Positions 1 to 10,289 are shown, numbered from the whole stretch's first letter. The stretch: 63,894 bases of DNA, filler included, from Choristocarpus tenellus KU-1152 (GCA_964200185.2; 13 parts of 13 records of this genome joined end to end with filler, not necessarily neighbours in it); one strand, 5' to 3'. Numbers and translations are program-made. The notes: generated from the letters alone by a model not told the origin.

Positions 1-3000
1 CTGATCACACCGATCACTGGCCACGCCTTCCAAGTGGTGGAAGGGAGGGGGGAAGGGAGGGGGGAAGCTGGGGGGAGTTGGATATTGTGCCATTGAATGA
101 GCACATCTCTTCGTAAGAAATGGATTGGTCATTTCGAAGACCACTTCAAGCCTCATGCATATAGTGACCTCATGCAGTCAACAGTGGCGAGGCAATTCAA
201 GCCTGCAGTGAAATTCTATCAAGTAGAGGTTTTAGGAGGTGCTCAAAATTGGAAACCCCTCAAGCCCCACACTAAAGGGTTATTGTCATTGAACACCAGC
301 TTGAATAGTCCAGGAGCACATATCCCAGGTGCGAGGAAGGGAGGGGCTTGACAGGGGTAGTCATAGCCAGCTAGAGTTAAAATATCTGGACTATGTCCGA
401 CAGAGTCACTTCTCGCACGACAGGGAGAGGGGTGCCTGTGCACACCTCGCCTCTGCCCACACAACCCTTCTCTAGTTCCTTTAGTGTTGTGAACGCCAAG
501 CAGGTAGTATAGAGGGTATCCTACTCTGAACAGAACAGGGTCATTACTCGGACAGGAAACATGGAGATCCTCTGGAACACTGCTTTTTATTCGGCAACAT
601 CATTCAACACTATAAATCCTATTCCTCCCCCCTCCATGATGAAATCCCTAAATAACACAAGTACAAGGTCAGCAATGAGGATCCTGCAGTGCATGCCCAC
701 AGGTCATTGTGAACCTCGACATTTCCTCTGCCCTGTGCGTTGTAGTAGACATCAGGGAGGTGTATCTGGATCCTATCAACTCACCCCCTTATCGCCCAGC
801 CAAACATCCTTCATTGACTTGTGCGCTGTTGCCATACCACGCTTCTGCCCCTCAGGTACGGCAGCACTGGTTGCACATAGAGCATCAAACACGGGACACA
901 ACGATGTCAAAACTAAGTTGGGGGATAGGTGCCGCACTCGACTACCAAATAATCTGGTAGCTATACATTGGAAGATCCTACTGCACCCCTTTCACTCCGG
1001 GAAGGGTATTGTTAGAATGTAACGTGATGATTGCCACTTTGTCTATCACCTGAAAACAGATGGCCGCGCAGCTTGGACAGCCCCACGGCGGAGGGAGGAC
1101 ATAAGGAGGGATGAAGACATGGTCCTGCCATTATAAAGATGAGAGCAGATGCTTCTGGTTAGGTCGAAGTTCATGAGGCAAAAGACTTGCTGTAATGGCT
1201 CAGCCGTCGTGCAACACTGAAACCTGCCACAACCAAAATGCAAAATTGAGGTATATTCGGGAATCTCTAGAGCCCAAACTGTCCATTTCTTGGCCAAGAT
1301 AAGTCAAACGGAATGCAACAAACGGTAATTTACAGAGGATCAAACTTTGAACCCTTGCCTAGCAACCCAACTTCGGCAACTCACGTATCAGTGGTTGTCC
1401 CTCAAAAGTTTGACGTTGATGTGAATGGGTTGTGTTTTTGTATTTTTCCACTGGTTTGCTCTTTTCCCTCACCCACAACTCGCAGCACGCAGACACGCCT
1501 CACGTAACGGACATTTTATTCTATGATGTGGATTGTAATGAGTAACCACACACGAAAACATTGGGCTGCTACCAGTGTAACTCTAACTCTCACGTAGGGG
1601 CTCAGCTTCTACAAGAGGGAAATATGATTAGGTGCATTACGGGTGTACAGCTCATCATGGGTCAGGAGGACGGGCACGACCTTCTCAAAGCAGCAAGGTT
1701 ACAGCCATGCTAATAAGGACTTCTCCATGAGTGGATGCTTGTCACATCTCAAGTACCTAGTATATTTGGCCTTTGAGAATGCATCAGTTGCTGGGTGACG
1801 AAAATATTCCTCGGACTAGCCTTGATTTTTCACGTAGGATGTTCACGTACCCTAAGTGGCATTCATGTGAAGTAGACTTGGCACACAAGTATGATGGAGA
1901 AATCGGATCGTATTTGGTATTTCAGACTCCAAGTGAGTGGATTGCGGAAGTAGAATTGAAGGCAGTTCTTTCTCGTTATTCATATCTCTGTGGTTTCTTT
2001 CGCACATGTCAGGTAAAGCACTATTGGTGCATTAGTATTTTGAGCGTGAGCTATGTGTGTACGTGCACGTGATCAGGTACCTTCGAGGGGCCGTCCACGA
2101 GACCCCACCAGAATCTCAAACCACCGCAAAAAAGAAACGCCAGGAGCATTTTCTTTTCTACCGCTCCATCAGAGAGAAGGTGGTGGAACTTTGGTATCAG
2201 AGCTTTGGCATTCCAATACCGCTCTCTAGCACTTCCGAGCACCCCTCTCATGTCGTCGAGAAGGGGCACTGCTTCTATTGGTGGTTGGGTGTATGGCACT
2301 GTGGTATCGTGCGGTTGGCTAACCAGAACAACGAAGAACACGTCCAGGTATTCCCGAGTCACGCTCGTCATTTGTGTGATTACAGGTTGAAGCACGTATT
2401 CGTGATGCGGAGAGCTCGCTATCACATGGGGCTTGGGCTAGAATGTGGGGACATAAACTGATATTCCTCTGAGTGTATTATATTAAAGAGGCATCAACCT
2501 TTTCTTTATCTCACACTATCCCAAGTACCTCCAATACTACGCACTCTGTCGTAGATACTCATTATTCTTTGTTTGATGGTTCTAGGTGCACTTCTTGGGA
2601 CTTGATAAGGAGAACGATGTGATAGTTCCGACTGGGGATCCGCGAATGCGCTGCACGGTAAGGTAAATTCTATGCCCTGATACCCCTGCAAAAGAAAAAA
2701 TGTATCCCAAGCCACTCACCAAACGCGGCAGTGGCATAGGATAGGCTACGACTCATCTCTTGATAAATAATAACACAAAAAAGTGTAGTGGCCAGTCACT
2801 TCACCAAAGAGTCTTGGCCCATACTGTATACAAAATAGTACCAGTACCCAACATAGACCTGGTCCCACATTCACAACCTACTGAGGATGTGCAATTAACT
2901 AACCCATTGACTTTACTCGCCTCTGTTGAAGCAGTTAGATTCAGTCTGATTGGGGTATCTTCCGGAGTATATACAACTCCCACCATCTACATCCTTACAT

Positions 3001-4017
3001 CACCCAGCACTATTCCCTCCAAAAAAGGTGTTGGACCCAAGGGATGGTCGGGATTCTGTCAACGAGAGGGTGTTGCCGGGTATATTTCCAATGGTGAGAC
3101 AATACAGCAAAGCAGCGAAGTGTGTCTGAGTCAGCTGTCTTGGGCCGTTGATTTCGTGTGAGGTTCCACATTATTGGGGTGGTTCAACTTATCCTTGAGG
3201 CAGGATAAAACCACTTTCCTTTGGGTGTGTTGGCACAAAACTTCTCCCTTTGGCTGGATACGAGGGGGTAGTGAGGTCTGCTGTACAAATGTTGGCTCTT
3301 TGCTGAGGCACGGGTTTCTCCCATAGTATCCATGCACAGGTCAAGTATCTAAGTGAATATGTATTTCAGAAGGAAATTTGATTCGTGCTATTAACAATCA
3401 GGCATAAATCAACAGCTCAACCAAGACAGAAATTTTGCCTAACCACAATCAGAATCTTGCACATGTAGGGTCCTCGACTCCAATTGAACTTGCCACACTC
3501 CTTGCAACCATGCAACACCCAACCCACCACCAGCTAATGATGCACAAATTGAATGCACACACGAAACTTTAGAAAGGTGACCATGTCAGGATCCACTACT
3601 TAGACAGCAGAGAAGCTGCACTAATGCTTCACACAGACCTGTATCTCTGTGGGGTAATCAAGGACCCTGATGTTACCCGAGGAGTTGCCCTGGTAGAGGT
3701 GGCAGGCCTGGCTGGGCCCGAGTTCATTGTGGTGCCCAATGTTCGGATGGAGCATGCCTGTCCCAAGACCAACTCAAGAGTAGAGTCTACTATCAAGGAC
3801 ATGCGTGACCAGGTGCAATAGGGGTGCACTCCACCCGGTTGCAAGTTTCGCAAAGTTTTGTGGATGGGGTCTGTGAATGCACACAGAGCACAGGTAAAAG
3901 TATTTGTGTGAATATGAGTGTGTCAAGGCTGACCGCAGCATGTGGAGTAGGGGCTGGGAGAGGTTCAGGAGGAGAAAGAGAGAGGTCTGGTAATAGTGCG
4001 AAGCGTGGAATCATACT

Positions 4018-4276
4018 GAGTGAAAGTATCTTAGGGGTACGAGTTTTGCCCTGTTTGTCCATTTGGAGACTGGCTTCTCATGGGGTTTTTTTATTACATT
4101 TTCCTACTCCAAAATGTTTAGGAGGAGGTAAAATGTGTACTTCATGAAAATGTGTGTCTGGAACAAGGATATTGATATCTCCTAACAAACACGATAGTCA
4201 AAATTACATCAAAATCGCAATATTGGATTTTGGCCCTCTAATGGACACGGCTCTACCCTCTAAGATACTTTGGCTC
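4018..4276 (+). mobile_element. MITE family A (~260 bp), full copy
   Basis: TIRs GAGTGAAAGTATCTTAG / CTAAGATACTTTGGCTC; 4-bp TSD TACT (4014-4017, 4277-4280). Confidence 0.92.
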
Positions 4277-5475
4277 TACTCCTATGTTCTCCCTTGGCCA
4301 AGTCTGTAACCCAACTCAATCGCACTAAATAGCAAACACATTTTTGCTTACAAGGACTCGCTCTTCATCGCCCGCCTCTCTGATCCAGTTGCTCAGGCAG
4401 GTGGATATTGCCACCAGTGCCCAGCTTCCTATTCTGGTTGTGAAGGGATCAAGGAGGGTGGTGGACCAGGTAGTTATGATTTCCCTGTGGGCCCATGGAG
4501 ATAAGCTCCTTGTAAGGGTTAACCAGCCCAAGGTGAGATTGAAAAGGGCCAAGATGGGGGGCAGAGAGGAAAGACCCCGCTAGATAGTTCATATAGATTA
4601 TAGTTTGAAATATTTTCTGCTCCTGCTAGTTAATACTGACAATAGGTAGCATCAAGGAGGTCAAATAATATTAGTTTAACACTGTTAATGAATTTTTTCG
4701 CATTGTTGCAACTTCCAGTCTCCAGTAATATTTCCGAAGTGAGTTGAGAGAGTTGAGCTGTCAACCCAGACAATGGTGGCAATGTGGTCGGTTTATCAAC
4801 TGACACACACAATAGTTTGAAAGTGTGCAATGATGCTCAAGCCTGTAGTCAGAACAACAATTCAAAAGGCGAGCAGAAACAAACAAACAAATAAATAAAT
4901 AATAAACAAATGACAAAGGGCAGAACATTGAATGAAAAGTGAGTAAAGCAAAAGAACAAATTAGTAGTGGTACATAAAAAGAAGGAATAAATAGAAAAAC
5001 TTTCGTGGCAAAGGAGAAAAATGCCTAGTCATTCAAATCAAGATGGGTGTTAGCTCCAACACCAAGGGCCATAGGTTCAAGGAGGGGCATCTATCCAGTA
5101 ACAGTCACACTTGAAGGAAACAACACCTGTCCCATAAACCCACTAACAGCACATACATTCCACCACAAGTAACCAGACAAGGAGGGTGCCCTAGGTCAGA
5201 CCCAATTCCGAACCCAATTGGCATGCCAGATGTCTCCATGAAGTGTTTGACTCCATCTTCTGCACACCTGAATGTCAGTAACACCTTGAAAAATAACAAA
5301 AAATAACAATTACTGAGTGTGTATCATCGGTAACAAGAGCGATTACATTAGCAGTTATACCCTGGACAATATATATATATATAACAATAACATTAATAAT
5401 ACAAGAACAACAATGAACCAAAGCAAATGAAAGGTACCCAGGATTTTACTGTTTTGTATTTAAGTCTGTTTTTCA

Positions 5476-5735
5476 TAGTCAAAGTATCTTAGAGGGTAGA
5501 GCCGCATCCGTTTTGGGGGCCAAAAAAATCAATGTTGCGATTTTGATGTAATTTTGGCTATCATGTTTGTTAGGAAGTGTCAACATCCTTGTTCCGGACA
5601 CACCTTCTCACAATGTATACATTTTACCTACTTTGAAATATTTCGGTGTAGGAAAATGTCATAAAAACCCATGGGAAGTCAAGTCCCAAACGAACAAACA
5701 GGGCAAACCTCACACCCTCTAAGATACTTTCACTC
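5476..5735 (-). mobile_element. MITE family A, full copy, reverse orientation
   Basis: Matches 4018-4276 in reverse complement; both TIRs present; TSD ambiguous. Confidence 0.88.
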
Positions 5736-5884
5736 TCAGTATTTTCATAATCATGTGTTTTTTCTCTTGATGATGTTCCAAGCTTGACTTGAGAACGTTT
5801 ATTTCTGTATCATTGTAAGAATTTCCGGCACCGTTAAAAAAATTACACATTTGTAAAAAATAACCGAATTTTGCATATATTTGT

Positions 5885-6148
5885 GACTGAAAGTATCTTC
5901 GAGGGTACAAGTTTTTCCCTGTTTGTCCATTTGGGACTTGGCTTCCCCATGGGTTTTTTATGACATTTTACCTTTTCCAAAATGTTTCGGAGCAGGTAAA
6001 ATGTGTATGCTATGAAAATGTGTGTCCGGAACAAGGATATTGACATTCCCTAACAAACACGAAAGCCAAAATTACATCAAAATTGCAACATTGGATTTTA
6101 GCCCCCAAATGAACGCGGCTCTACCCTAACCCTAAGATACTTCGGGTC
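5885..6148 (+). mobile_element. MITE family A, full copy, right TIR altered by telomeric sequence
   Basis: Matches family A; right TIR reads TACCCTAACCCTAAGATAC instead of TACCCTCTAAGATAC. Confidence 0.87.
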
Positions 6149-7130
6149 GGATGGCTCCCTAACCTAACCCTAACCCTAACCCTAAGACAGAAGATCGATC
6201 CAGGATGATTATTGAGCACAAAATCCTATGGGCATATACTTGTGAGGAGCCTCTCCACATACCTAACCCTAGCACCTTCACCTCGGAAGTCTTCACACAT
6301 CCCTAACCCTAACCCTAAGAGATCCGCAAGGTATGAAGGTATCAAGGTATAACCCTAACCCTAACCCTAATGCCACAATGAGCACAAAGAGAAACCTTCA
6401 GGTATCATGAGCGACGTAGTTAAGTCCATTTGAATAACCAGTTTGAGTTAGCTGCCATTTTCATGTATGGACATACATACAGCGAAGATGCAACCTTTGT
6501 CCAGCAAAAAAAAAAAAAATGACCTGTAGTTTCAGTGTCAAACAAGCTTTGATAGTTAAGTTGCCCCAACTATAAGAGCATTTTAATCTTTGCTGGGTAC
6601 TCTCTGATGAAATCGCGATGCATTTACTGAGGAAGCCGTGATGGTACTTCCTCTGTTCTGGTGCTGGTTTTCAACGATGGTCGGAATAAAAATTAAAAAA
6701 AAAACTAATGCGCATGTCCAATAACATGACACCATTGTTGCATATACCTGTTTGCTGGTTAGGGTTAGGGTTAGGGATAGGGTAAAGCCATCTTACCTAC
6801 GATACATAGGCAAGTTAGGGTTAGGGTTAGTAGAACATTAGACTATATATATCTTGAGGTTAGGGTTAGGGTTAGGGTTAGTGACAAATAACTACGACAA
6901 AAAAGAAAGATGATAGTCAGAGAATGGGAAGATGCTCTGCCAGCCTCCACATTCATGACTCACCAACCCCTCTTGTATTTGGACAACAAAGCCAGACAAA
7001 GTTCAACATACAGACCCTACAACGCCTTATTCAAAGCTATGAAGTAATAATGTACACCTCTTATGACTGCATTTCGATGCCATTATAACCAGCAACAGTT
7101 TCACTCCAGTAAGCAAACCGCACTGAACAT

Positions 7131-7314
7131 GATTCAAAGTATCTGGGGGGGGGGGTGCTGGCTGTCCATTCGTGGCGATTTTTTCCATGTCGTGATTTTT
7201 CGGTGATTTGGTTCCATGCGTCGGATGGATAATGTTAGTGCACTTCTCCTGTTCAGTGCCCAAATGGACACCCTGGTGTAGACCCCCCACCCCCCCCTCC
7301 AGATACTTTGGGCC
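7131..7314 (+). mobile_element. MITE family B (~180 bp), full copy
   Basis: TIRs GATTCAAAGTATCTGGGG / CCAGATACTTTGGGCC; 4-bp TSD ACAT; subterminal CCCAAATGGAC shared with family A. Confidence 0.9.
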
Positions 7315-8967
7315 ACATCACAACTTGTTAAATTATTGCCACAGGAAAAGCCTTCCTAACAATCACGGTTCAGCAACAGGTGAGCAATTAACCCTAACCC
7401 TTACCACAAAAAAAAAAATTGTGGGTCACATATATTTGCACCCATGCCTTCAACTTTCCCAGCTGGCTAGAGTGGGGTCATGAGTCAGTATGGTTGCAAT
7501 TTCTGATGGCCCTGGACCAGCCCTGTTCAGCGAATTTCACAGGATCAACTGACAAACCATTCCGCTAACACTCTGACAGATCTGGACTGGTCGAGTCAGC
7601 ATATATCTTACGGGGACCGGTTCACAACTCGGCTGGGTCACAGTCTTTGAGTATGAAGGCAATCCCATCCTACAAAAGCAGCATAAACCAAAAGAGAGGG
7701 TTAGGGTTAGGGTTAGGGTTAGGTTTGCTCAGCACCTCTACTTCCAGGGAATATGTTTTCACCACGTAAGGTTGCTTCTCCTCCCAATGCATAGATTCCT
7801 AAAATAAGACTGTACATTGTAGAGTCCATAAAATAGCCCCAAAACTCTTTCTGTTTGCCTACCCTGCTTAGTTGACAGCACCAAGCTGGGGCTAGGACGG
7901 ACTGGCTTGATTGAAGCCATCTGCATATGAGCATATTCTGCTCGAAATAATCCTAACCCTAAACACTGCACAGCACAACCCAACAGCTAACTAGCCCAAA
8001 AATGTTTCATTTAACCCAAAAATGTTTCATTTAATCACCTAGGCACATCCATTCCGATTTCCCTCATTCAGCAAAATCCAATCAATGCTCAAGAGATGTT
8101 GACATGAATCCTACCTTCACAACACTAATATAGAGATGTTGACATGAACCCTAACCCTAACCCTAACCCTAGTTGACATGTAAGTTGCATAAAAAAAGAG
8201 AGCAACAGGCATTGATGTAAACAAAGTTCATTGTCAAGAATCATTTTTTTTTCTTTTTTTCATAAAACTTTGGCAGGCGCTACCATAACCCTAACCCTAA
8301 GTTTACCTCACTTTCACAACAACTGAAGTGAAAAATAAGATAAAACTCAGTACCTGCATCAAGCCGCAACAGGGATGTATGTCAAATTTACATTTGCAGG
8401 CCTGAGCTACCAGTTGCACTAGTTGCTTAGGCTAGTCTTAGTCTTAGTATGGTAAGTCAAAGCGCAGTTGAAAGAGTGGTTAGGGTTAGGGTTACGCAGT
8501 TGAAAGAGTGACAGTGCCATCTGCGTTTCTGTCAATTTCTGTCAAAAGGTCGACGGCACGCACCTGACAACTCTGGGTGAGGACCCTAGAGTGGACGGGT
8601 CAGGAAATATCTTTCACGTTACAAAACCTTCTCAGGGTTAGGGTTAGGGTTGATAAAACGGTGCCTTCGGTTTTCATTGTTCTGACTTGAAGCTATAACC
8701 CTAACCCTAACCCTAAGTTTTCATTGTTCTGACTTGAAGCTATAACCCTAACCCTAACCCTAACCCTAAGAAGTCTCATGCTTCTGCACCGCTAAAATAT
8801 AGAACTCAGGGTTAACCCTAACCCTAACCCCAACCCTAACCTTATAGAACCACAGCACACTACACGCCCTACCATGAGTATTGAGTAGTCTCCAGTAGAT
8901 CAAACAAAAAATAAAATAAAATAAAATAATAATAATAATAATCAAATAAACACAACATGCCACGAAC

Positions 8968-9039
8968 CTGATAGCTGGTTGTGGTTCAGGAGCAAATTTT
9001 TTAGCTGCAATAGGTTTCCCAGTTCCTTGGGGATCTTGC
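8968..9039 (-). CDS. 72-bp phase-1 LRR exon GKIPKELGNLLQLKNLLLNHNQLS (brown-algal ROCO/LRR-type)
   Basis: Exactly 72 bp between ctcag| and |gttcgt; matches the plant-type LRR consensus GxIPxELGxLxxLxxLxLxxNxLxG. Confidence 0.88.
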
Positions 9040-9646
9040 CTGAGCGAGGTAGAGGATTAAGGGTTAGGGCTATAGGTCATGTTATCAACCTTAGTGGTAT
9101 GATGTAATTGTTTCAAGTCAGGTTAGCGTTAGGGTTAGAAATTACAGAGGTACTGCAGCGTAAAAGACGAACAGTTCCTTGTATCCCCTCCAACCCTAAC
9201 CCTAACCCTAACCCTCCTAACTCACAAATTCAAACCCCACTGCCAACTACTCCGGAGTACATACTATGATGGTAAAGAGCACTGTTTAGCCTCGTCAAAC
9301 ACGAGAGACCCCTCGCTAACCCTAACCCTAACCCTCTTCGAACACGAGAGACCCTTCGCTAACCCTAACCCTAACCCTAACAACTGGCACTCCACCAAAA
9401 AAAATAACTTAGGGTTAGGGCATTCAGGTCGGGACTCCGAGAAGAAGAACTTCCTGACACAGCTTGAGGAAATTAAAGAGAGACCAAGTTCGTAATACTT
9501 CTGACGTGGGCCAACCCATAGAGTGAGATCTACATTCACAAGCACAACAGATAGACGTTATCAAGGTGCACAAGGCAAGCAGCAAATAGTATTCTACACC
9601 TTCCCCCCCATAACAAAAAAAATGTGGATAAAATATAATGATGCAC

Positions 9647-9718
9647 CTTTCAACTCATTCATGTTCAGTCCGAGCTCTTTCAGGTTCACCAGATTCCCCA
9701 GTTCCTTAGGGATTGGAC
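9647..9718 (-). CDS. 72-bp phase-1 LRR exon GPIPKELGNLVNLKELGLNMNELK
   Basis: Exactly 72 bp between cgcag| and |gtgcat; same LRR consensus, strand and phase as 8968-9039. Confidence 0.88.
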
Positions 9719-10289
9719 CTGCGTAGGCTCAGGTTAGGTTTAGGGTTAGGGTTCAGTTACACACACGCAAGGCAATGAGAGAGCAGTTACATTTTTATCA
9801 GGGACAGTTACACGCGTCATGCAGTCTTCCTGATAAAAATGTCGACCACAAAATGGTTCCATCAAAATAAGCAAATTGGGAAACTTGACTTCAGAAAGGT
9901 GCTACTCATCAGCTGCTGGTGGAATGACTAGAGCACAGCACAAGGAGGTACACCTCTTAACCCTAACCCTAAGTGCAGCACATGGAGGTACACCTCCTAA
10001 CCCTAACCCTAACCCTGATAAAATGCCCATTTGCAAGGTCATGAAAAATTGACCTAACCCTAGGTCAGGCATGATCATAGACCCCAATTTTGAGCATGTA
10101 GGCAAAGTGTTTGAAAAATGAGAAGGCAAGCAATTGCACTCAAGGGAGAAAACTATATAACCCTAACCCTCAAGAAAGTCATACAGATACAGGGATTTTT
10201 TTTTCTGGGGGAGGGGGGGGGGGGGGGGGGGGGGGCAGAAAAGGAGGGAGGGAAAGACCCCGCTAAGCTCCCTCCCCCCCACAATCCTG

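What the first reader, a model, noticed from the sequence alone, without database searches (positions are those of the whole stretch)
6123..10170. Telomeric-repeat hotspot around 72-bp LRR exons: possible telomerase-scarred break hotspot at a diversifying LRR gene
Seen: ~29 short TTAGGG/CCCTAA tracts in both orientations within ~4 kb, versus only a few in the other ~59 kb. The same interval holds two exact 72-bp phase-1 LRR exons (8968-9039, 9647-9718). Known: brown-algal ROCO/LRR genes encode one LRR per 72-bp exon and are proposed to diversify by exon shuffling; short interstitial telomeric repeats in vertebrates are attributed to telomerase acting at double-strand breaks. Inference: this locus breaks repeatedly, is patched with telomeric DNA and is rejoined, and the tracts could also act as shared homology for intron-intron recombination that shuffles LRR exons. 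I am not aware of a described link between the two processes.
Basis: partly seen in the sequence, partly recalled or inferred. Interest (0 to 1): 0.85.

Follow-up and report, generated by a model that had tools for sequence, protein, structure and literature searches.

The report
Dense telomere-repeat cluster, not LRR-specific
A 4-kb stretch around two leucine-rich-repeat exons of the brown alga Choristocarpus tenellus really is packed with short telomere repeats. It is one unusually dense example of hundreds of such clusters in this genome, most of them in unrelated DNA, so a special link to the LRR exons is not supported.

Summary
64 of the window's 68 TTAGGG/CCCTAA hexamers lie in 6123-10170. 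They form 26 perfect tracts of 11-27 nt in both orientations, about 80 times the density of control DNA and of the genome average. They surround two genuine 72-bp, phase-1 LRR exons on the minus strand. Contigs from three read sets contain the tracts unchanged.

The genome is the brown alga Choristocarpus tenellus; terminal arrays show its telomere repeat is TTAGGG.

The LRR link is not supported.
- The genome has more than 6,000 (TTAGGG)3 matches, concentrated in many similar clusters.
- Six other clusters (about 128 kb of 188 kb fetched) contain no LRR exon.
- One cluster fills introns 2-4 of a TMEM65-GAF gene. The orthologous Discosporangium gene shows the same; four other lineages do not.

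Tract flanks are unique DNA. The signatures fit insertion of telomeric repeats at breaks, as in mammalian short interstitial telomeric sequences (ITS):
- an in-register 4-nt insertion at telomere-like seeds in MITE (miniature transposon) ends, 470 of 13,697;
- a few target duplications;
- a phase bias only at the G-strand 5' junction.

Best reading: one very dense member of a lineage-wide class of ITS clusters, lying at LRR exons by coincidence. Exon shuffling through the tracts is untested and unlikely.

The parts
6123..10170 (.). Hot zone: 26 perfect (TTAGGG)n/(CCCTAA)n tracts of 11-27 nt in both orientations, plus degenerate ones, set in otherwise unique DNA
   Evidence: flanks do not match other clusters or repeats once the tracts are masked
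9647..9718 (-). 72-bp type-I LRR exon A, AG/GT bounded, phase 1
8968..9039 (-). 72-bp type-I LRR exon B, AG/GT bounded, phase 1
9040..9646 (-). Intron between the two LRR exons (607 nt), with 5 perfect tracts and one degenerate tract
9742..9751 (-). CCCTAACCCT in sense orientation, 23 nt upstream of the acceptor of exon A; it contains a CUAAC branch-point-like motif
   Evidence: this arrangement occurs only at the window's two exons in the whole genome
9060..9069 (-). CCCTAACCCT in sense orientation, 20 nt upstream of the acceptor of exon B
5885..6146 (+). MITE copy 3 (260-bp family). Its 3' inverted repeat carries a 4-nt in-register insertion that creates the first tract, 6123-6135
4020..4280 (+). 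MITE copy 1, canonical 3' end (5' end lacks one base), outside the hot zone
5477..5738 (-). MITE copy 2, no telomeric insertion at either end (one end has a single-base substitution), just outside the hot zone
8138..8180 (.). Tract 8147-8171 flanked by a direct 9-nt repeat (GTTGACATG), like a target duplication
8463..8509 (.). Tract 8478-8494 flanked by a direct 15-nt repeat, like a target duplication
8670..8763 (.). Exact 47-nt tandem duplication, each unit being 26 nt of unique DNA plus a tract
9290..9378 (.). 43-nt tandem duplication (93% identity), each unit being unique DNA plus a tract
9936..10012 (.). 40-nt tandem duplication (94% identity), each unit being unique DNA plus a tract
7134..7317 (.). 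Copy of a second high-copy short element with G/C-run inverted ends; the only dispersed repeat inside the hot zone

Best explanation
The interval is one unusually dense member of a genome-wide class of interstitial telomeric sequence (ITS) clusters in Choristocarpus tenellus. The class is probably shared with its sister genus Discosporangium.

Proposed mechanism: short runs of the organism's own telomere repeat are written into unique, mostly intronic DNA when breaks are repaired. Telomerase most likely extends a broken 3' end that already ends in a few telomere-like bases; a repair polymerase copying a telomeric template is the alternative. Tracts land in either orientation, later decay by point mutation, and are sometimes copied locally by 40-50-nt tandem duplications. 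Some regions are far more prone to this than others.

The two LRR exons happen to lie in such a region. The tracts are not a property of LRR exon arrays.

Shown: tract density, the clustering elsewhere, unique flanks, in-register insertions, and presence in reads.
Inferred: breaks as the entry point, telomerase as the enzyme, and why particular regions are hot.
For: 1. TTAGGG is this organism's telomere repeat. Long arrays sit at contig ends with the expected orientation (C274:4-129, C713:6-73). The organism was identified from a 100% identical protein on a contig of exactly C48's length.

2. The phenomenon is genome-wide. (TTAGGG)3 gives 6,354 matches against 6 for the control pattern, and they are strongly clustered. 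There are 936 close same-strand tract pairs on many contigs.

3. Six other clusters, about 128 kb of the 188 kb fetched, have 9-17 tracts per 4 kb and no LRR or TPR exon.

4. On C48 all 16 tracts lie in introns 2-4 of a TMEM65-GAF gene (p = 7e-4 if spread evenly over non-coding DNA). The Discosporangium orthologue has 10 tracts in 3.5 kb, mostly in the same gene's introns, although the introns themselves no longer align. Orthologous loci of Sphacelaria, Scytosiphon, an ENA contig and Chrysoparadoxa have 0, 0, 0 and 1.

5. With tracts masked, the hot zone matches no other cluster and no dispersed repeat except one short element. The tracts are therefore not carried by a transposon.

6. A 260-bp MITE serves as a reporter of the earlier state. 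Its inverted repeat CTTAG|AGGGTA is canonical 13,227 times. It carries the in-register insertion GGTT 470 times and one further hexamer 7 times. The insertion occurs at both ends of the element, 176 and 106 times, usually at only one end per copy. Simple slippage cannot produce it. Converted ends make up 4 of about 15 in tract-bearing loci against 3.4% genome-wide (p = 0.0014). Another MITE copy has a tract inserted in register after GG, with 3 filler bases.

7. Direct duplications flank 9 of 263 tracts, against 15 of 1,032 shifted controls (p = 0.04). This is close to the 4.5% reported for horse ITS, where in-register bases at the break are also the rule (PMC7215372).

8. The G-strand 5' junction prefers the TTAGGG register: 80 of 263, chi-square 30.4, p = 1e-5 against simulation. 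The 3' junction does not (p = 0.05). This polarity is what a 5'-to-3' synthesising enzyme would leave.

9. Neighbouring tracts more than 100 nt apart have nearly random relative orientation. Those under 60 nt apart are mostly in the same orientation (31 of 40), which fits independent insertions plus local duplication.
Against: - No empty allelic or orthologous site was available, so no insertion event is directly documented.
- The three 5'-converted MITE copies I could read share two minority variants. Some converted ends may therefore be inherited within a subfamily rather than arising independently.
- The excess of flanking duplications is marginal.
- Recurrence of a cluster in the same gene in two genera, despite unalignable introns, is as well or better explained by selection for the tracts, or by a conserved chromosomal position such as a subtelomere. 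Discosporangium's background density is unknown.
- The window is denser than any of the other clusters sampled (25 against at most 17 per 4 kb; it holds 11 of the 936 pair matches). Something local may add to the effect.
- Tract density around other LRR exons was tested only weakly, because no more genome sequence could be fetched.
- Whether the part of the hot zone below 8968 is intronic is unknown.
Confidence: 0.55

Rival explanations
1. The LRR gene is a specific, recurrent break hotspot patched by telomerase, and the tracts provide shared homology for intron-intron recombination that shuffles 72-bp LRR exons.
For: - This is the densest cluster seen (25 tracts per 4 kb, 11 of 936 pair matches), and it surrounds two phase-compatible LRR exons.
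- Both exons carry a sense CCCTAACCCT 20-23 nt upstream of their acceptor. My rough estimate of this arising by chance in both is p of about 0.006, so an exon plus its tract-bearing flank may have been duplicated together.
- Tracts sit at the borders of 40-47-nt tandem duplications.
Against: - Similar clusters lie in DNA without LRR exons and in a TMEM65-GAF gene.
- None of the other roughly 21 PxELGNL exons has the upstream motif.
- C559, with four LRR exons, is absent from the pair list. This test is weak, since three of six known clusters also escape it.
- The window has no inactivated or opposite-strand LRR exons, which are the published hallmark of shuffling.
- About 4% of the sampled genome lies in clusters and about 14 contigs carry such exons. 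By my estimate, one overlap is expected by chance roughly 40% of the time.
- The two brown-alga LRR papers do not mention telomeric repeats.
Confidence: 0.07
2. The clusters are kept by selection because double-stranded TTAGGG tracts work as binding sites. A Myb-type telomere-binding protein could mark a chromatin or replication-timing domain or regulate the host gene.
For: - A cluster occurs in the same gene in two genera whose introns no longer align. Perfect tracts up to 34 nt are present in both, so they must be renewed or maintained.
- A double-strand binding site can work in either orientation.
- On C48 the tracts are confined to introns.
- C. elegans ITS are intron-enriched and associated with silencing marks (PMC6800518).
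Against: - Conversion of transposon ends, which is unlikely to be selected, is enriched near tracts. This points to a regional mutational process.
- Many tracts are decaying.
- Only one orthologous gene pair was examined, and the Discosporangium background is unknown.
- Nothing on protein binding or expression could be tested.
Confidence: 0.17
3. The clusters mark subtelomeric, or formerly telomere-adjacent, domains where exchange with telomeres and chromosome healing seed repeats. The LRR gene is simply subtelomeric.
For: - By rough estimate, the share of the genome in clusters (a few percent) matches some 50-60 chromosome ends of about 50-100 kb each, broken into many contigs.
- A conserved subtelomeric position would explain the shared TMEM65 cluster.
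- Fast-evolving receptor-like gene families are often subtelomeric (general knowledge).
Against: - The two contigs that end in telomere-type arrays (C274, C713) show no internal close pairs (an insensitive test).
- Tracts lie in both orientations within unique intronic DNA, not as head-to-tail degenerate arrays.
- The contig is only 10.3 kb and has no terminal array.
Confidence: 0.12
4. A few founder tracts were multiplied locally by tandem duplication, inversion and divergence (minisatellite-like dynamics), rather than by many independent insertions.
For: - The window has three recent duplications of tract plus flank, at 8670-8763, 9290-9378 and 9936-10012. Similar ones occur elsewhere (C21, C533, C408, C172).
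- Same-orientation neighbours are in excess at distances under 60 nt (31 of 40, p = 7e-4).
Against: - Most inter-tract sequences are unrelated to each other.
- Orientation is random beyond 100 nt.
- The MITE-end conversions and the internal MITE insertion are new insertions, not copies.
- This process therefore probably adds to the clusters but does not explain them.
Confidence: 0.08

Closest known systems
Short interstitial telomeric sequences of mammals, inserted during double-strand-break repair (Nergadze/Giulotto group; PMC7215372)
   Same: Short exact runs of the species' own TTAGGG repeat at internal sites in unique DNA. Bases in register with the repeat at the pre-insertion site. Occasional direct duplication of the target (4.5% in horse, about 3% here). 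Either orientation.
   Different: Mammalian short ITS are isolated loci, a few hundred per 3-Gb genome. Here they pile up at up to 6 per kb over kilobases, at many loci in a 164-Mb genome. Tracts are shorter (2-4 units). No empty sites or telomerase-RNA-derived inserts have been examined.
Caenorhabditis elegans ITS tracts on chromosome arms (PMC6800518)
   Same: Composites of perfect and degenerate telomere repeats interspersed with other sequence. [quoted passage not shown] Abundance differs between lineages.
   Different: Different repeat (TTAGGC) and phylum. Worm ITS are defined as same-strand composites, whereas here orientations are mixed over kilobases. Small RNAs and chromatin marks are unknown here.
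Brown-algal type-I LRR exon arrays of ROCO and other LRR genes, proposed to diversify by exon shuffling (Zambounis et al. 2012, PMC3341825; PMC11378527)
   Same: Two 72-nt exons, each encoding one 24-residue LRR with the GxIPxxLGxLxxLxxLxLxxNxL pattern. Identical intron phase on both sides.
   Different: No ROC-COR or other domain, and no inactivated or opposite-strand LRR exons, were found in the 10 kb. Neither paper reports telomeric repeats in the introns.
Subtelomeric and telomere-associated interstitial repeats
   Same: Telomeric hexamers away from the terminal array, with degenerate variants.
   Different: No terminal array on the contig. Tracts lie in both orientations inside unique, at least partly intronic, DNA. 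Chromosomal position is unknown.
Plant telobox (AAACCCTA) cis-elements
   Same: A short telomere-like motif inside genes.
   Different: Teloboxes are single motifs near transcription starts of particular gene classes, not dozens of 2-4-unit tracts spread through introns.

Membership tests
Short ITS formed at break repair | Exact repeats of the organism's own telomeric hexamer at a non-terminal site | tested here: met
   26 perfect tracts. Terminal TTAGGG arrays at contig ends C274 and C713.
Short ITS formed at break repair | Flanks are unique DNA, not part of a transposon or satellite | tested here: met
   With tracts masked, the hot zone matches only one short element at 7134-7317, within 264 kb of sampled genome.
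Short ITS formed at break repair | Bases in register with the repeat already present at the pre-insertion site | tested here: met
   True of all 5 events whose earlier state is given by the MITE consensus: four at TTAG|AGGGT and one after GG. Genome-wide, 470 ends are converted against 13,227 canonical. Caveat: some of these may be inherited within a subfamily.
Short ITS formed at break repair | Occasional direct duplication of the target | tested here: met
   9 of 263 tracts against 15 of 1,032 controls, p = 0.04. Three of them are in the window.
Short ITS formed at break repair | An empty site in an allele or a related species | not testable with these tools
   Three read sets are identical to the window. 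Introns of the sister genus do not align.
Short ITS formed at break repair | Telomerase involvement (inserts derived from telomerase RNA, or dependence on the enzyme) | not tested
   Only indirect evidence: a phase bias at the G-strand 5' junction.
Brown-algal type-I LRR exon array (ROCO/LRR genes) | 72-nt exon encoding one LRR of the GxxPxxLxxxxxLxxLxLxxNxLx type | tested here: met
   Exons 9647-9718 and 8968-9039. Consensus taken from PMC3341825.
Brown-algal type-I LRR exon array (ROCO/LRR genes) | Same intron phase on both sides of each exon | tested here: met
   Each exon starts with two bases and ends with one base of a split Gly codon, so the introns are phase 1.
Brown-algal type-I LRR exon array (ROCO/LRR genes) | ROC-COR GTPase (or another effector domain) in the same gene | tested here: inconclusive
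   No Pfam domain in the ten longest open frames of 1-4600. The gene runs off the contig at 10289.
Brown-algal type-I LRR exon array (ROCO/LRR genes) | Inactivated or opposite-strand LRR exons in the introns (the sign of shuffling) | tested here: not met
   Motif scans of all six frames find only the two exons.
Subtelomeric interstitial repeats | Lies next to a terminal telomere array | not testable with these tools
   The 10.3-kb contig ends in a G-run, not a telomere. The assembly has 27,310 contigs.
Subtelomeric interstitial repeats | Head-to-tail degenerate arrays in a single orientation | tested here: not met
   17 minus and 9 plus tracts, interleaved and separated by unique DNA.
Intron-enriched ITS as in C. 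elegans | Tracts concentrated in introns and absent from exons | tested here: inconclusive
   Met for the TMEM65-GAF gene on C48 (16 of 16 in introns 2-4) and mostly for its Discosporangium orthologue (9 of 10). In the window, only the 607-nt intron between the two exons is certainly intronic.

The most novel reading that the evidence does not exclude
Discosporangiales brown algae have evolutionarily persistent, gene-specific intronic domains. In these domains telomerase, or a telomere-templated repair pathway, keeps writing short telomeric tracts. The domains persist because the tracts do something, such as binding telomere proteins to set chromatin state or replication timing, or promoting local recombination. 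At an LRR receptor-like gene this activity could feed diversification of the exon array.
Probability: 0.1. Interest if true: 0.8.

Novelty: new variant of a known kind. Interest (0 to 1): 0.42.

Why it matters
The proposed tie between telomerase scars and LRR exon shuffling would have been a new route to receptor diversity, but the evidence does not support it.

What remains is still useful. An early-branching brown-alga order appears to carry many kilobase-scale clusters of very short interstitial telomeric repeats. I found no report of this. Thousands of copies of one MITE act as a built-in reporter showing in-register telomeric insertion. This could become a natural system for studying how telomeric repeats enter chromosome interiors and why some regions attract them.

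It is also a practical warning. Telomere-motif scans used to find chromosome ends or fusions in these genomes will give many internal hits.

Tried and rejected
For the same reason no DNA around other LRR exons could be fetched. The 76 kb around MITE copies served as the control instead.
- A 23-residue exon used as a protein query found only 5 places.
- Pfam does not score single 23-residue LRR units, and found nothing in the other open frames of the window.
- The bacterial promoter/terminator scan was irrelevant. Rfam found nothing.
- An LRR profile search of protein representatives returned only giant LRR proteins. The two I looked up were bacterial metagenome genes, so no brown-alga LRR loci could be obtained that way.
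- The IQ-motif frame gave no homologues. The dynein exon gave only unnamed Logan fragments. I therefore have no Discosporangium control gene.
- The window's own genome is withheld from the look-up of encoding contigs.
- Transposon-borne tracts: rejected.
- A general target-site duplication, as for a transposon or retroelement: rejected, since only about 3% of tracts have one.
- Polymerase slippage as the source of the 4-nt insertion: rejected, because the inserted GGTT is not a copy of adjacent bases.
- An RNA-level, orientation-dependent role: unlikely. Sense orientation is mixed and differs between genes, with 17 of 26, 5 of 16 and 7 of 10 tracts G-rich in sense.
- The close-pair listing is an insensitive detector. 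It misses three of six known clusters, so absences in it count for little.


Full report
**Observation**

TTAGGG occurs 68 times on the two strands of the window, against 7.3 expected. 64 of these lie in 6123-10170. A script that extracts maximal perfect runs found 26 tracts of 11-27 nt (2-4.5 units). 17 read CCCTAA and 9 read TTAGGG on the + strand. All lie in 6123-10170 and none in 1-6122. Tandem Repeats Finder lists the same arrays.

The two LRR exons are real. On the minus strand, 9647-9718 and 8968-9039 are each exactly 72 nt, preceded by AG and followed by GT. Each begins with two bases and ends with one base of a split glycine codon, so the introns are phase 1. Each encodes a plant-type LRR unit.

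Contigs built independently from three public runs of one study cover most tracts with no differences. The tracts are therefore in the reads. The runs may include the assembly's own data and showed no polymorphism.

**Organism and background**

A TMEM65 exon on another contig of the same assembly is 100% identical to a protein named for Choristocarpus tenellus. That protein's longest contig has exactly the length of contig C48.

Long TTAGGG arrays at contig ends, in the expected orientation, show that TTAGGG is its telomere repeat.

Genome-wide, (TTAGGG)3 has 6,354 matches against 6 for the reversed control. That is 0.039 per kb, against 2.96 per kb in the hot zone, a 77-fold excess. In 76 kb flanking random copies of a common MITE there are 6 tracts, none reaching 17 nt. 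That is 0.08 per kb, against 6.4 per kb here.

**Is the cluster tied to LRR exons?**

The (TTAGGG)3 matches are strongly clustered. I fetched 188 kb around those on the largest contigs. Six clusters (C30, C37, C67, C4, C48, C22; about 128 kb) reach 9-17 tracts per 4 kb, against 25 in the window. Scans of all six frames found no LRR or TPR unit in any of the fetched loci. The loose 72-nt exon filter gave only false positives.

On C48, tblastn with the annotated protein places five exons. All 16 tracts fall in introns 2-4 of this TMEM65-GAF gene.

The orthologous gene of Discosporangium mesarthrocarpum, the sister genus, lies on a 3.5-kb contig. That contig has 10 tracts plus much degenerate telomere-like sequence, mostly in the same gene's introns. 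Only the exons of the two genes still align. Orthologous loci of Sphacelaria, Scytosiphon, an unnamed ENA contig and the outgroup Chrysoparadoxa have 0, 0, 0 and 1 tracts in 6.7-21.8 kb.

A degenerate pattern for 'PxELGNLxxL' exons finds 23 places on 14 contigs. The arrangement of CCCTAACCCT 10-40 nt upstream of such an exon occurs only at the window's two exons. Contig C559, with four such exons, is absent from the listing of close tract pairs. That listing also misses three of the six known clusters, so this counts for little. I could not fetch DNA around other LRR exons.

The converse test, whether LRR introns in general are rich in tracts, remains weak.

**Nature of the tracts**

With tracts masked, the hot zone matches nothing in the other clusters or control loci except a short high-copy element at 7134-7317. 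The tracts are embedded in unique DNA and are not carried by a transposon.

Relative orientation of neighbouring tracts is random beyond about 100 nt. Neighbours under 60 nt apart are mostly in the same orientation (31 of 40). This agrees with several tandem duplications whose unit is 'unique DNA plus tract': 47, 43 and 40 nt in the window, and others on C21, C533, C408 and C172.

**How they arise**

A 260-bp MITE with thousands of copies gives the ancestral state. It occurs three times in 4020-6146. Its inverted repeat contains the telomere-like CTTAGAGGGTA.

The copy that abuts the hot zone has GGTT inserted after CTTAG. This creates the first tract, 6123-6135. The same change is present in three other copies in tract-bearing loci.

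Genome-wide counts are 13,227 canonical ends, 470 with the 4-nt insertion and 7 with one further hexamer. The insertion occurs at either end of the element, 176 and 106 times, and usually at only one end of a copy. GGTT is not a duplicate of neighbouring bases, so slippage cannot make it. It needs a telomeric template.

Converted ends are 4 of about 15 in tract-bearing loci, against 3.4% overall (p = 0.0014). A further MITE copy carries an internal tract added in register after GG, with three filler bases.

Nine of 263 tracts are flanked by exact direct repeats of 9-26 nt, against 15 of 1,032 shifted controls (p = 0.04). Three of these are in the window.

The register at the G-strand 5' junction is biased towards TTAGGG (80 of 263, p = 1e-5 against simulation). 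The 3' junction is not.

These features match the signatures described for mammalian short ITS: in-register bases at the break in most loci, target duplication in 4.5%, and telomerase implicated (PMC7215372).

Caveats: no empty site was seen. The three 5'-converted copies share two minority variants, so some inheritance within a MITE subfamily is possible. Telomerase itself is an inference.

**Why clustered?**

This is not resolved. Enrichment of converted MITE ends near tracts favours a regionally acting mutational process.

Recurrence in the same gene in two genera favours a stable determinant. That could be selection for the tracts, a conserved chromatin or expression state, or a conserved chromosomal position such as a subtelomere. 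The two contigs ending in telomere-type arrays show no internal close pairs, but the test is insensitive, and the 27,310-contig assembly gives no chromosomal position.

C. elegans offers a precedent for intron-enriched, exon-depleted ITS whose origin and role are likewise open (PMC6800518).

**The LRR gene**

Only two LRR exons are detectable in the 10 kb. No ROC-COR or other domain was found, and no pseudo or opposite-strand LRR exons. The gene runs off the contig upstream.

Both exons have a sense CCCTAACCCT 20-23 nt upstream of the acceptor. This contains the branch-point-like CUAAC and is unique to this locus. It suggests either that the exon was duplicated together with a tract-bearing flank, or that a tract was co-opted as a branch point. 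The flanks are otherwise barely alignable.

They were searched singly or as an alignment of the two in-frame genomic segments.

**Literature**

The two papers on brown-alga LRR exon shuffling do not mention telomeric repeats. Searches for interstitial telomeric repeats in brown algae or Choristocarpus, and the Phaeoexplorer genome paper, returned nothing relevant.

**Verdict**

The LRR-specific part is not supported.

The interval is best seen as the densest sampled example of a lineage-wide class of ITS clusters. This is a new variant of a known kind, of moderate interest.

Noticed in passing
window 4020-4280, 5477-5738, 5885-6146; genome-wide: A 260-bp MITE with inverted ends AAAGTATCTTAGAGGGTA has at least 13,000 ends in the genome. 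About 3.4% of ends carry an in-register GGTT insertion that makes two perfect telomere units, and 7 carry three units.
   Followed up: yes
L012 (G000:C48:3001-13000) and L053 (Discosporangium contig CAXNAE020011728.1): Introns 2-4 of a TMEM65-GAF gene hold 16 telomeric tracts in Choristocarpus. The Discosporangium orthologue's contig holds 10 in 3.5 kb, plus long degenerate telomere-like stretches. The introns do not align, and four other lineages lack the tracts.
   Followed up: partly
window 9742-9751 and 9060-9069 (minus strand): Both LRR exons have a sense CCCTAACCCT, containing CUAAC, 20-23 nt upstream of their acceptor. It is a possible branch point or a sign that exon and flank were duplicated together. 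The arrangement is unique in the genome.
   Followed up: partly
window 7134-7317: A second short high-copy element with G-run/C-run inverted ends. Its depth in read contigs is very high.
   Followed up: no
window 10207-10235: A 29-nt G run followed by G/A-rich low-complexity sequence close to the contig end, probably the reason the assembly breaks here.
   Followed up: no
window 7995-8034: An exact 20-nt tandem duplication without a telomeric tract. Small tandem duplications in this zone are therefore not limited to tract borders.
   Followed up: no
G000:C274:4-129, C713:6-73, C73:2-72; C3:7115-7168, C379:10796-10879, C97:14640-14693: Terminal telomere-type arrays at some contig ends, and internal perfect arrays of 50-90 nt on other contigs. 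C73 starts with TTAGGG units that switch to CCCTAA after about 25 nt.
   Followed up: no
G000:C559, C1907, C2037, C1986 and ten further contigs: Other 'PxELGNL' LRR exons, 23 strict matches in all, spaced 0.5-7 kb apart. These are the loci to use for the decisive comparison.
   Followed up: no
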